Positions 6,101 to 9,100 of a DNA stretch of 64,000 nucleotides are shown here, in pieces. Within the stretch, counting starts at the first letter, position 1. Each line of letters begins with the position of its first letter. The notes beneath the pieces were generated by a model. That model was not told the origin of the DNA. It saw only the letters and a program-made list of their open reading frames with translations, and did not search any database. Position numbers and translations under genes: made by a program. Source of the DNA: Tubulanus polymorphus (lineage: Eukaryota; Animalia; Nemertea); NCBI RefSeq assembly GCF_964204645.1, contig NC_134035.1, positions 310,001-374,000 of the forward strand, given 5' to 3'.

Positions 6101-9100
6101 TGTTTGTGATTTATGCATGCATTGTGTCATTGTTCGTCCTGTCTCTCTCACTCTCCTGATCCCTAAATACCTTACAATAACTTCCTCCAGTTCATATCAT
6201 GTGTTACACCTTCAGCGTAATGTTATAGTAACAATACGGTGGTTCATAAAATACGTATCCAATATTTCTAGACCCTTCTTTTGGCATGTAAGCAATTTTA
6301 AGCGTAACCGGTATGTTGATATGGAGAAGTGTCCTAATTTGAATCTCCTCTGGATGAGAACGTACTTTATGAATAACCCCTAAAGTCTGCCGCATGTCTC
6401 TTCGATGTTATCACTTGTAAATACTGATGATAATAGGTAGTGATTTTCATACTGTGTGTCACATAACTCTGATGAATGCATGATGTGTTAGAGTTCATCT
6501 TATTGTCAGTGATAAAGTATTAAAGCTGCAATTCATCCTCAGACTTTCTAAAGTCACATTAGTAATAGTCACCACTTTGAGGAGTTTATAGATGAATAGT
6601 TCATTCTCAGTTAGTTAGACATAACAAAATTCTCTGAAGAACTTTCAGTAATTTGTAGTTTCTGTGATTCTGATAAATATCGATTGTCTCTTTCAGAGCA
6701 TGCACCACCGCGACCACCATTACCAAGAGACACGGCGCCCCCTCGCCCTCCGCCCCCGGAGACTGACGATGAGGATGAGGCTAACTTCCCGATACCGCAA
6801 GCCAATCAACCAATCATGGTCAGTCAAACATCTTAGTATTACCGGTAACATACAGTTAAAAAAGTCAAAATTGAAAGGTTTATTTAGACTGCAATGTATG
6901 GTCGTTTCCTGACATCCATCAGCGAGGTGGAATTCACTATTACACAGATTAACGCAAGTAACTAGAAAATGCTTCATTTATACAATAGATGGCAGCTCAT
7001 GCTTTACATCTGGAAGCGAAACAGTGGTCGAGTAAAGACAATGAAATCATTGCAGCTGCAAAACGTATGGCTTTACTGATGGCTAAACTTAGTCAGCTAG
7101 TCAGGTATGGTTTCAACAGCTCAACCTGCCGTTAGGTTTAAAGGCTCTCAGTGTTTGATAGATTGATTTGATTGATTATTGATTTGTGTTTGTTTCGATG
7201 GTGTATTTTAGAGGAGAGGGAGGAGGCAAAAAAGATTTAATCGCTTGCGCGAAAATGATCGCGGAATCTTCAGAAGTTGTGACAAGTTTAGCCAAAGAAC
7301 TGGCGCGTGAATGTACGGATAGACGCATGAGAACGGTAAGTATTCTTACGTGGGGGTGGCAGGTGTTTGGGGTGAGAGTTGTAAGTATTCTTACATGGGG
7401 GTGAAAGGTGCGGGAGTCTACAACCAGTTTAATGTATATATTTGTGAAAATTATTTCAGAATTTACTTCAAGTTTGTGAACGAATTCCAACGATTGGAAC
7501 TCAATTGAAAATTCTGTCTACAGTCAAAGCTACGATGCTCGGCGCTCAAGGTAAAATTTATTCTATCGATCCTCGATTGTCAAAACATGTTTTCCTTTTC
7601 TTCATTGGATATTTACACTCTATGAGTGCTACAGGATCCAGTTCAACAGTTACTATTTGACTCTTTGATAAATTTGAAATAAACTATTGGCTATTCGACT
7701 CTAGAATTAAACTTTACTGTGAACTGTTGATCTGGGGTCCTAAAAGCCAGTCGCTCAAACAATAGTCATTTGAAGTTAACTTAGGGGCTGCAGTTGCTTA
7801 AAAGTTGAGAGTTAACCAGTGGATAGTTGACATAGTGACATTTAAAAGTTCATTATTACTATGGTATTTATCCGCCGGTTATCTTTAACCAACCTTTGAG
7901 CAACTGCAGCCACAGTAAATACCACAGTAACAATGGAGTTTCGATTGTCACTGTGTCAGTTATCGAGTGGTTAACTTCAAACAACTTTTGAACAACTGAC
8001 ATCCGGACCCAGTTTCAAGAAAAAATTTAATTCAAATTTTTGGTTTAATTGCTGTTGGTTACTTCATATCTTCAATGAGGACAACAATTCAAACTCAAAC
8101 AATTTCAAGCTTAAACTTTCCATGAAACTGAACCCTGGTCTATGTGATATGTATTCTCTATTTTGTTCTCTATTCTGATTTGTCTTTGAAACTGTAAACT
8201 TTCAACTCGACCCCTATTAGTTACACGTGTTATAATATCTAAACTATTGATTGATAATAGAACCGATACCTAGTGTGGACGGCAGTGAAATGGCCTGCGG
8301 TAAATATGAGAGGCATGAACGCAAAATATCAACATTAAAAACAACATTAAAACAACTGACAATTAATCATTCCATTCCATAGACAATCATTGACAATCAT
8401 AGATGATAATAGACAATGATTTTACAGAATGTTTTATGGAATGGATGTAATTTTATATAGATTTTAATTCAGCGAATTCAAACTAAACTTAAACTAAACC
8501 CAGTTCACAGCATGTATTACACCGACCGAAGAACACACATGATTCCCAACCTGCAAAGTATGAACCCAGTTCGGAGACTATATCAGCAACCAGTTCCACA
8601 GTTATCAGTGGAATTTACTCACTCACAACTGTGGAAGTGGTTCTTGTAATTAAAACGTTTTCAACTTGGACAAAACATGGTATTTCAACTCTAAGCCCCG
8701 GGTCTCCACCCTATACTACCACCAACCCCCCCCCCCCATCATTTTCATTCATACATGTTCTCATCAAACTGCTTTATTTTCTGTTCATTCATTCTCTTTC
8801 ACTGATTGCTTGCTCTTTTGTTCCTTCACTCTCTCAGAAGCCGTTTCAAGTATTGATGGCAGTGAACTTGAATGCGGTAAATAAAACTCACACAGTTAGA
8901 GTGTGTGAAGCATGCAGCATTGAATATTTGATTCCCTCTTAAATATTACCGATCATAAAGTACCGAATCTTAAACACTTTATTCACAGTTAAAAAACCGG
9001 GTGTTTCATAAAAGCTGGATTCAATTGTTTTTCATTTGAAAAAATACATGTATTTAGAAAACCCCAAACGTTAAACTGCGTAAGTGCATTATGATCAGCT

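What the first reader, a model, noticed from the sequence alone, without database searches (positions are those of the whole stretch)
8261..8876. Duplicated 39-nt exon pair hidden in the last vinculin intron: probable mutually exclusive switch in the actin-binding tail
Seen: two exons 577 bp apart with identical length (39 nt), identical phase (1-1) and identical donor (G|gtaaata). They encode [13 protein letters not shown] and [13 protein letters not shown] (shared E-x3-S-[VI]-DGSE-x2-C). The similarity stops at the exon edges and includes synonymous changes (GAC/GAT) and conservative changes (V/I, M/L), which is the pattern of selection on protein sequence after an old exon duplication. Both would insert between KATMLGAQ and [10 protein letters not shown]. 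Established: this is the helix 4-helix 5 loop of the vinculin tail bundle that binds F-actin and the head; vertebrate metavinculin inserts elsewhere (start of the tail), whereas alpha-N-catenin has an alternatively spliced insert at the equivalent loop. Inference: a tissue-specific none/A/B switch tuning actin binding or autoinhibition, each variant adding a conserved Cys.
Basis: partly seen in the sequence, partly recalled or inferred. Interest (0 to 1): 0.8.

Follow-up and report, generated by a model that had tools for sequence, protein, structure and literature searches.

The report
Duplicated optional exon in vinculin tail
The first small exon is this animal's copy of an old optional 13-residue piece of the vinculin tail that databases already model in many invertebrates, and the second is a lineage-specific extra copy whose use in RNA was not seen.

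Summary
Two 39-nt, phase 1-1, AG|..|GTAAATA candidate exons lie at 8261-8299 (A) and 8838-8876 (B) in the last intron of a vinculin gene, and their likeness ends exactly at the splice signals.

Exon A is not hidden or new. It is the orthologue of a 13-residue cassette exon (consensus EPIPAPDGSEIAC) inserted at the same point. RefSeq isoforms and assembled transcripts carry it in molluscs, annelids, a brachiopod, chelicerates, a centipede, termites and locusts, and a Trichinella model has it. Isoforms that skip it exist in the same species.

Exon B has no counterpart in the two single-copy relatives I read. It keeps the conserved D-G-S-E, hydrophobic and Cys positions, both splice sites and a downstream GCAUG, so it looks selected. 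Two caenogastropods carry their own tandem pair of this exon; Babylonia's RefSeq models use one or the other.

RNA-like contigs of this organism join 7550 to 10055 through a 6-nt microexon (9308-9313, ESS). That microexon is annotated in scallops and is the subject of a separate scan note. No contig enters A or B.

A conserved (U)GCAUG 14-55 nt downstream suggests Rbfox-type control. Mutual exclusivity is untested and nothing in the anatomy enforces it. The finding is modestly interesting.

The parts
7460..7550 (+). Constitutive vinculin tail exon (end of helix 4). It ends ..KATMLGAQ plus one base (phase 1); donor G|gtaaaa.
   Evidence: sequence. (PF01044 positions 764-793, E 2.9e-12). (X1 spliced contig runs through it).
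8261..8299 (+). Exon A: 39 nt, phase 1-1, [13 protein letters not shown]. It is the orthologue of the protostome 13-residue cassette exon.
   Evidence: Orthologous exons at the same intron position: L002:5507-5545, L003:11229-11267, L008:19479-19517, L009:11790-11828. The insert is present in RefSeq isoforms.
8313..8317 (+). GCATG 14 nt downstream of exon A; candidate Rbfox-type splicing enhancer.
   Evidence: The same motif lies 15-55 nt downstream of the orthologous exon in six other loci.
8838..8876 (+). Exon B: 39 nt, phase 1-1, [13 protein letters not shown]. It is a tandem duplicate of exon A and has a strong pyrimidine tract before its acceptor.
   Evidence: No second copy was found in L002 or L003.
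8910..8914 (+). GCATG 34 nt downstream of exon B.
   Evidence: Only four GCATG occur in the whole 2504-nt intron.
9308..9313 (+). 6-nt microexon AATCGA (cacag|..|gtaagt). It turns ..AQ-G-SEED.. into ..AQ-ESS-SEED.. This is the form seen in RNA-like contigs.
   Evidence: joint 7550>10055 with the 6 letters between, X1 depth 70.9. (the AG-AATCGA-GT context occurs once in the window). The same ESS loop is in Pecten and Mizuhopecten isoforms.
10055..10224 (+). Last coding exon (helix 5 and the C-terminal arm), followed by the 3' UTR.
   Evidence: PF01044 positions 797-851, E 4e-21. (aligns to human vinculin 1014-1065). (X1 and X3 contigs).

Best explanation
Exon A is this animal's copy of an ancient optional exon of protostome vinculin. 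The exon is 39 nt and phase 1-1. When included, it lengthens the loop between tail helices 4 and 5 by 13 residues. Exon B is an old tandem duplicate of that exon, found so far only in this lineage. It has kept the most conserved positions (D-G-S-E, a hydrophobic residue and the final Cys) and its splice signals. Both copies, like the orthologous exon in molluscs, an annelid and a brachiopod, have a (U)GCAUG shortly downstream. That is the classic position from which Rbfox proteins promote exon inclusion, so I infer tissue-restricted inclusion (typically muscle or nerve). A separate 6-nt microexon (ESS) sits further down the same intron and is the form seen in the available RNA.

Shown: the anatomy, the orthology of A, cassette use of the orthologous exon in other species, the loop position, and the conserved downstream motif.

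Inferred: that A and B are used in this animal, that Rbfox drives them, and that the longer loop alters actin binding or head-tail closure.
For: - Anatomy and significance of the pair.
- Orthologues with the insert at the same site: 114 of the 120 best tail matches carry it. They come from bivalves, gastropods, Octopus, a chiton, Owenia, Capitella, Lingula, horseshoe crabs, ticks, scorpions, a pseudoscorpion, a centipede, termites and locusts. Trichinella nativa also has it.
- Cassette behaviour: members of the same 90% clusters have the skipped loop. Logan transcript contigs of about 4 kb encode both the 957-residue skipped form and the 970-residue included form of a scorpion-type vinculin.
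- Scallops show all four combinations of the 13-residue exon and ESS.
- Genomic exons of 39 nt lie in the same intron in L002, L003, L006, L007, L008 and L009.
- GCATG lies within 60 nt downstream in 8 of 10 exons, against a background of 0.6-1.6 per kb.
- The core of B is conserved: codons 7-10 differ from A by one synonymous change, while 12 of the other 27 nt differ.
- The insert is a loop between H4 and H5 in the model. Mapping to human residue 1014.
Against: - No contig of the RNA-like runs X1 and X3 joins into A or B. X1 depth is 0 over both exons. The X1 contig runs through the 7550 donor without a break, so in that sample any A or B form is minor at best. Contigs drop rare variants, and only one sample gave a junction there.
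- A has a weak pyrimidine tract and three changes at positions that are nearly invariant in other spiralians.
- B differs from the consensus at seven of 13 positions and has lost all three prolines.
- No close relative was available to test whether B is conserved.
- The search for an Rbfox marker domain in this genome was uninformative.
Confidence: 0.7

Rival explanations
1. A and B form a strict either/or (mutually exclusive) pair: each mRNA takes none or exactly one copy.
For: - The two exons are tandem homologues of equal length and phase.
- There is a parallel pair in caenogastropods (L006 and L007). Babylonia RefSeq isoforms X1 and X2 have the same length, 1094 residues, and differ only in which copy they use.
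Against: - Nothing enforces exclusivity here. Using both keeps the frame, so there is no decay signal. The intron between them is 538 nt, so there is no steric block. I found no convincing competing RNA pairing: the inverted repeats are short and AT-rich.
- The Littorina gene model strings both copies in series.
- In scallops the 13-residue exon and the ESS microexon combine freely.
- No RNA in this animal bears on the question.
Confidence: 0.3
2. B, or both A and B, is a decaying relic that is no longer spliced in this lineage, which uses only the skipped and ESS forms.
For: - No A or B junctions, and zero X1 depth over both exons.
- A and B depart from a consensus that is otherwise almost invariant across spiralian phyla.
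- A has a poor acceptor tract.
Against: - The flanks have diverged to randomness, yet both copies keep open frames, AG and GTAAAT signals, the DGSE core, the Cys and a nearby downstream GCATG.
- Weak acceptors are also seen at the orthologous exons of species whose gene models include the exon.
Confidence: 0.2
3. The A/B likeness is a chance match, or part of a repeated element in the intron.
For: The intron holds a very high-copy repeat just upstream, at 7733-8208.
Against: - B scores 44, against a next-best of 20 in the + strand frames of the 64-kb window.
- z = 7.6 for the exon block.
- The DNA run covers both exons at single-copy depth, and the region occurs once in the assembly.
- A has orthologues across phyla.
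Confidence: 0.01

Closest known systems
The 13-residue cassette exon of protostome vinculin, as modelled in RefSeq isoforms (for example Pecten maximus X1-X8, Mizuhopecten yessoensis X1-X19, Dermacentor, Limulus, Tachypleus)
   Same: Same insertion point (after ..MLGAQ, before G[ST]EEDQE), same 39-nt length and phase, same P-x-P / DGSE / Cys pattern, and optional use.
   Different: Here there are two tandem copies, and both are more diverged than in other spiralians. Inclusion in RNA was not seen in this animal. I found no paper describing the exon; it exists only as automatic annotation.
The tandem pair of the same exon in caenogastropods (Babylonia areolata L006:75860-75898 and 78922-78960; Littorina saxatilis L007:52122-52160 and 54352-54390)
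   Same: A tandem duplicate of the same 39-nt exon in the same intron. Babylonia isoforms X1 and X2 use one copy or the other.
   Different: There the upstream copy is the odd one (it ends in V and has no downstream GCATG) and the peptides are otherwise identical. Here the downstream copy is the diverged one and both end in Cys. The duplications are probably independent.
Metavinculin (vertebrate muscle isoform of vinculin)
   Same: An optional exon that alters the actin-binding tail of vinculin in a tissue-restricted way.
   Different: By established knowledge, metavinculin has a 68-residue insert at the start of the tail, where it replaces helix 1. This insert is 13 residues in the H4-H5 loop. 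The vertebrate intron near this loop lies elsewhere, after ..EESEQ (read-through ORFs P0137 and P0196).
Rbfox-dependent cassette exons with a conserved downstream (U)GCAUG
   Same: A short regulated exon with a weak acceptor and a GCAUG 14-55 nt downstream, kept across phyla.
   Different: Rbfox binding, an Rbfox gene in this genome and tissue-specific inclusion were not shown here.

Membership tests
Vinculin (Pfam PF01044), tail domain | Sequence match to the family profile over the tail exons | tested here: met
   the last exon scores 75 bits and the preceding exon 46 bits (cut-off 38.1); aligns to human vinculin 1014-1065.
Vinculin (Pfam PF01044), tail domain | Five-helix bundle, with the insert site in the loop between helices 4 and 5 | tested here: met
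   on a natural orthologue (Liolophura isoform X6), not on the window's own spliced product. Helices are 25-38, 46-65, 72-99, 103-135 and 153-185, and the insert at 138-150 is a loop with pLDDT 53-67.
Protostome vinculin 13-residue cassette exon | 39-nt phase 1-1 exon in the intron between ..MLGAQ and G[ST]EEDQE | tested here: met
   for A and B. for six other genomes.
Protostome vinculin 13-residue cassette exon | Conserved peptide pattern (prolines at 2, 4, 6; D-G-S-E at 7-10; hydrophobic at 11; Cys at 13) | tested here: met
   A keeps 10 of the 13 consensus residues. B keeps 6 of 13: position 1, positions 7-10 and Cys 13; position 11 stays hydrophobic (L for I), and the prolines are lost. 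The feature is met for A and only partly for B.
Protostome vinculin 13-residue cassette exon | Present in some mRNAs and skipped in others | tested here: inconclusive
   Shown in other species. In this organism, only forms without A or B were seen in the one informative RNA-like run.
Mutually exclusive tandem-duplicated exons | Adjacent homologous exons of the same length and phase | tested here: met
Mutually exclusive tandem-duplicated exons | Exactly one copy per mRNA | not testable with these tools
   The single read-laying run showed no A or B junction at all.
Mutually exclusive tandem-duplicated exons | A mechanism that forbids double inclusion (frame shift with decay, an intron too short to splice, or competing RNA pairing) | tested here: not met
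   39 + 39 nt keeps the frame. The intron between the copies is 538 nt. Only short AT-rich inverted repeats were found. Competing RNA pairing cannot be excluded without relatives.
Rbfox-regulated cassette exon | (U)GCAUG within about 100 nt downstream, conserved between species | tested here: met
   offsets +14 (A), +34 (B), +24, +15, +22, +24, +55 and +49. Background is 0.6-1.6 per kb.
Rbfox-regulated cassette exon | An Rbfox protein in the genome, and inclusion that depends on it | tested here: inconclusive
   The PF12414 search of the window's own genome was blank, but the control genomes were blank too. Dependence on Rbfox is not testable here.
Metavinculin-type insert | Insert at the start of the tail (helix 1 region) | tested here: not met
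   The insert site maps next to human residue 1014, between H4 and H5.

The most novel reading that the evidence does not exclude
The helix 4-helix 5 loop of the vinculin tail is a splicing-controlled tuning point that dates to the protostome ancestor. It would combine a 13-residue Rbfox-driven cassette with a 2-residue serine microexon. The cassette has been tandemly duplicated at least twice independently (in this lineage and in caenogastropods) to give alternative loop versions. These would alter actin bundling or head-tail autoinhibition in muscle or nerve.
Probability: 0.35. Interest if true: 0.55.

Novelty: new member of a known kind. Interest (0 to 1): 0.35.

Why it matters
Vinculin's tail is the part that grips actin and locks the protein shut. 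In vertebrates its one well-studied splice variant, metavinculin, changes actin bundling and is linked to heart disease.

Invertebrates turn out to have a different optional insert in the same domain, at least as old as the protostome ancestor, with a conserved splicing-control motif. I found it only in automatic annotation, not in any paper I searched.

The duplicated copy here, and the independent duplication in snails, suggest the loop is under repeated selection for diversity. That gives a concrete set of tail variants to test in actin-binding and autoinhibition assays. For genome annotation, the finding shows that 39-nt and 6-nt exons in this intron should be modelled.

Tried and rejected
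- The sequencing-run search returned no run on record as RNA. I judged X1 and X3 RNA-like from their spliced contigs and X2 DNA-like from its flat depth. X6 laid nothing.
- The look-up of encoding contigs failed or gave no DNA for P0015, P0030, P0006 and P0267. L004 did not reach the upstream exon, so it says nothing about its 13-residue exon.
- An Rfam scan of the intron gave only sub-threshold miRNA-like hits on hairpins of repeats.
- A search of the window's own genome for the Rbfox C-terminal domain was blank, as were its controls, so it is uninformative.
- Four paper searches found nothing on this exon.
- I did not pursue docking/selector RNA pairing. Without a close relative there is no covariation to test, and the inverted repeats are at chance level.
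Exons were searched singly by reference, and natural orthologues stood in for the spliced tail.
- The third word-search slot was left unused because no by-reference query could carry exon B into a full-length match.

Full report
**1. The observation**

Reading 7300-10400 confirms every coordinate. The exon 7460-7550 ends ..KATMLGAQ plus one base. The last coding exon starts at 10055 and reads [11 protein letters not shown].. through to a stop at 10222-10224. Both match Pfam Vinculin.

In the 2504-nt intron between them lie two 39-nt stretches. A is at 8261-8299 and B at 8838-8876. Each is preceded by AG and followed by GTAAATA. In phase 1 they read [13 protein letters not shown] and [13 protein letters not shown].

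The pair is the top direct repeat of the intron. With the exon A peptide as probe over the three + strand frames of the 64-kb window, B scores 44 and the next best 13-mer scores 20. The block from AG to GTAAATA aligns with z = 7.6 against shuffles. The 150 nt on either side align no better than shuffles, with z = -1.2 and 0.0. The region is single copy in the 268-Mb assembly.

**2. RNA in this organism**

The run search found five holders of the 3' end, none labelled RNA. When laid on 6900-10450, X2 behaves as DNA, with a flat depth of about 34. X1 and X3 carry spliced contigs with GT..AG joints at 7102>7210 and 7334>7459, so I treat them as RNA-like.

One X1 contig (depth 70.9) joins 7550 to 10055 with six extra letters, AATCGA. 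These letters are a 6-nt microexon at 9308-9313 (cacag|AATCGA|gtaagt). The splice-flanked string AG-AATCGA-GT occurs once in the window. It changes ..AQ-G-SEED.. into ..AQ-ESS-SEED...

No contig joins into A or B, and X1 depth over both exons is 0. That X1 contig passes the 7550 donor without a break, so any A or B form is minor in that sample. Contigs drop rare variants and only one sample is informative, so this is weak evidence of absence. Another first-stage note (s1-493090) had flagged two 6-nt candidates at 9121-9320; the RNA supports the one at 9308-9313.

**3. Relatives**

A word search with the last exon gave fragment proteins. One of them, P0047, comes from a Logan contig (L001). It reads ..MLGAQ, then a 13-residue insert of the exon A type, then GTEEDQE...

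A full scan of 1.8 billion representatives, using that contig's tail as query, brought up two proteins with related inserts at the same point:
- a horseshoe-crab isoform, Tachypleus tridentatus X7;
- a Trichinella nativa vinculin.

A second word search used the Tachypleus tail. Of the best 120 full-length proteins, 114 carry the insert. The variants are:
- consensus EPIPAPDGSEIAC in scallops, Mya, Ruditapes, Mercenaria, Dreissena, Pinctada, Haliotis, Babylonia, Elysia, Plakobranchus, Octopus and the annelid Owenia;
- one- or two-residue variants of that consensus in Mytilus, Patella, Pomacea, Gigantopelta, the chiton Liolophura, the annelid Capitella and the brachiopod Lingula;
- ..TPDGSEIIC forms in ticks, horseshoe crabs, scorpions and a pseudoscorpion;
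- a related form in the centipede Scolopendra;
- a more diverged form in termites and locusts.

Members of the same 90% clusters lack the insert, so it is a cassette exon. Logan transcript contigs of about 4 kb encode both the skipped form (957 residues) and the included form (970 residues) of a scorpion-type vinculin. Use therefore does not rest on gene prediction alone.

Pecten maximus and Mizuhopecten have all four loops: skipped, ESS, +13, and +13 with ESS. The ESS form is the same loop as in the window's X1 contig.

**4. Genomic orthologues**

The 39-nt exon sits in the same intron, with AG and GT, in six genomes:

| Locus | Source | Exon position |
|---|---|---|
| L002 | unnamed ENA contig | 5507-5545 |
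| L003 | Mytilus trossulus | 11229-11267 |
| L008 | Lingula | 19479-19517 |
| L009 | Capitella | 11790-11828 |
| L006 | Babylonia | two copies, see below |
| L007 | Littorina | two copies, see below |

I scanned L002 and L003 with the exon B peptide as well, and each holds a single copy.

The two caenogastropods each hold two tandem copies. Babylonia has L006:75860-75898 (ending ..IAV) and 78922-78960 (ending ..IAC). Littorina has L007:52122-52160 and 54352-54390. The copies are orthologous between the two snails: 35/39 and 37/39 nt identical.

Babylonia RefSeq isoforms X1 and X2 are both 1094 residues long and differ only in which copy they use. The Littorina model strings both copies together.

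In the window the upstream copy is the canonical one and the downstream copy is the diverged one. That is the opposite order to the snails. The window's vinculin is only about 50-58% identical to molluscan and brachiopod proteins in the middle domains. I therefore take the two duplications as independent.

A is no closer to B (26/39 nt) than to the snail copy 2 (27-28/39), so the duplication here is old. Other agents' notes call this genome a ribbon worm (for example s1-492708). I did not test that.

**5. Is B selected?**

Between A and B, codons 7-10 (D-G-S-E) differ by one synonymous change, while 12 of the remaining 27 nt differ. The positions B keeps are those most conserved across the spiralian, chelicerate and centipede orthologues: D7, G8, S9, E10, a hydrophobic residue at 11 and Cys 13. 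Insects and Trichinella vary at some of them. B also has the better pyrimidine tract and a GTAAAT donor.

Its flanks have lost all likeness to A's. A dead copy of that age should have lost its frame or its splice signals. I put B's use at about 60% and A's at about 85-90%.

**6. How it may be controlled**

GCATG lies close downstream of the exon in eight cases:

| Exon | Offset downstream |
|---|---|
| Window A | +14 |
| Window B | +34 |
| L002 | +24 |
| Mytilus | +15 |
| Lingula | +22 |
| Capitella | +24 |
| Babylonia copy 2 | +55 |
| Littorina copy 2 | +49 |

The L002, Lingula, Capitella and both snail copy-2 sites read the full TGCATG.

The motif is absent after the snail copy 1. Background is 0.6-1.6 per kb, so one hit in a 60-nt span is expected in roughly 4-9% of cases. 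Seven of eight independent exons is far beyond that.

It is established knowledge that a (U)GCAUG downstream of a cassette exon is the Rbfox enhancer position. The Rbfox step itself is inference. My search for an Rbfox marker domain in this genome was uninformative.

**7. Where the insert sits**

The last exon aligns to human vinculin 1014-1065, so the insertion point is just before residue 1013.

I folded the tail of a natural orthologue with the insert (Liolophura X6, alignment A1). The model has pLDDT 82 and five helices. H4 ends at 135, the insert at 138-150 is a low-confidence loop, and H5 starts at 153.

From memory of the vinculin literature, H4 and H5 form much of the actin-binding face. 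Also from memory, the neighbouring H2-H3 loop touches head domain D4. A longer loop could plausibly affect either. This was not tested.

The ESS microexon adds serines before an acidic run, which is a casein-kinase-type context. That too is inference.

**8. What is known and what is new**

Exon A is already in public annotation as predicted isoforms. I found no paper on it in four searches.

New here:
- the second copy, B;
- the recognition that the cassette dates at least to the protostome ancestor;
- the conserved downstream GCAUG;
- the recurrent tandem duplication.

Vertebrate and sea-urchin entries that came up lack the insert. The vertebrate intron lies after ..EESEQ, not at this point.

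**9. Limits**

Exons were used singly by reference, and natural orthologues stood in.
- Mutual exclusivity, tissue specificity and any biochemical effect remain untested.

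Noticed in passing
window 7733-8208: A very high-copy repeat lies inside the intron: summed contig depth is about 1e4 in X1 and X2 against about 34 for single-copy DNA. 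It has long inverted arms (7810-7870 / 7916-7976) and a sub-threshold Rfam mir-126-like hit (32 bits, gathering score 47). It is probably a MITE- or SINE-like element.
   Followed up: partly
window 8513-8664: A 23-bp hairpin (8588-8610 / 8620-8642) lies in the intron between A and B. RNA-like runs cover it: an X1 contig spans 8513-8664, and X3 depth of 11.9 is higher than over the vinculin exons. The DNA run covers it at about twice single-copy depth. It may be a repeat fragment or a small-RNA source. Only sub-threshold miRNA-like Rfam hits were found.
   Followed up: partly
window 9161-10084: Unspliced X1 contigs cover the intron around and downstream of the 6-nt microexon at about 12% of the depth of the spliced contig. 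This suggests slow removal or retention of that intron.
   Followed up: no
window 9146-9151: This is the second 6-nt candidate microexon (ctcag|ATGCTG|gtatag) of the other first-stage note. No contig used it.
   Followed up: partly
window 10460-10790 and 11620-11960: Two tandem-repeat arrays lie in or after the 3' UTR. One has a unit of about 44 nt (TATACCCAGACAACA..). The other has a unit of about 30 nt (CAGGGCACCTGCCCAGT..).
   Followed up: no
L003:13284-13289, L007:57105-57110, L008:20193-20198: ESS-type 6-nt microexon candidates (AG|AATCNA|GTRAGT) lie between the 13-residue exon and the last exon in Mytilus trossulus, Littorina and Lingula. The serine microexon therefore also looks old.
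   Followed up: partly
L003:12675-12683: The NCBI model P0001 of Mytilus trossulus uses a 9-nt microexon (giving ..AQ-EQE-C-SEED..) instead of the 13-residue exon.
   Followed up: partly
L006 and L007, downstream of copy 1 (L006 from 75899, L007 from 52161): In both snails the odd (..IAV) copy lacks GCATG downstream. Instead the two share a GU-rich run and a GCCTGCTGRTTGG motif about 70-80 nt downstream. A similar TGCTGATTGG lies downstream of the L002 exon. This may be a different splicing control element.
   Followed up: no
L008:16635-16682 and 18731-18778: The Lingula contig carries two identical copies of the exon ending ..MLGAQ. This may be an assembly duplication or a real one.
   Followed up: no
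P0194, P0262 (Macrostomum lignano); P0124 (Helicoverpa armigera): Other lineages have unrelated inserts at the same loop: about 20 residues in a flatworm and 7 residues in a moth model. The site seems prone to optional inserts.
   Followed up: no
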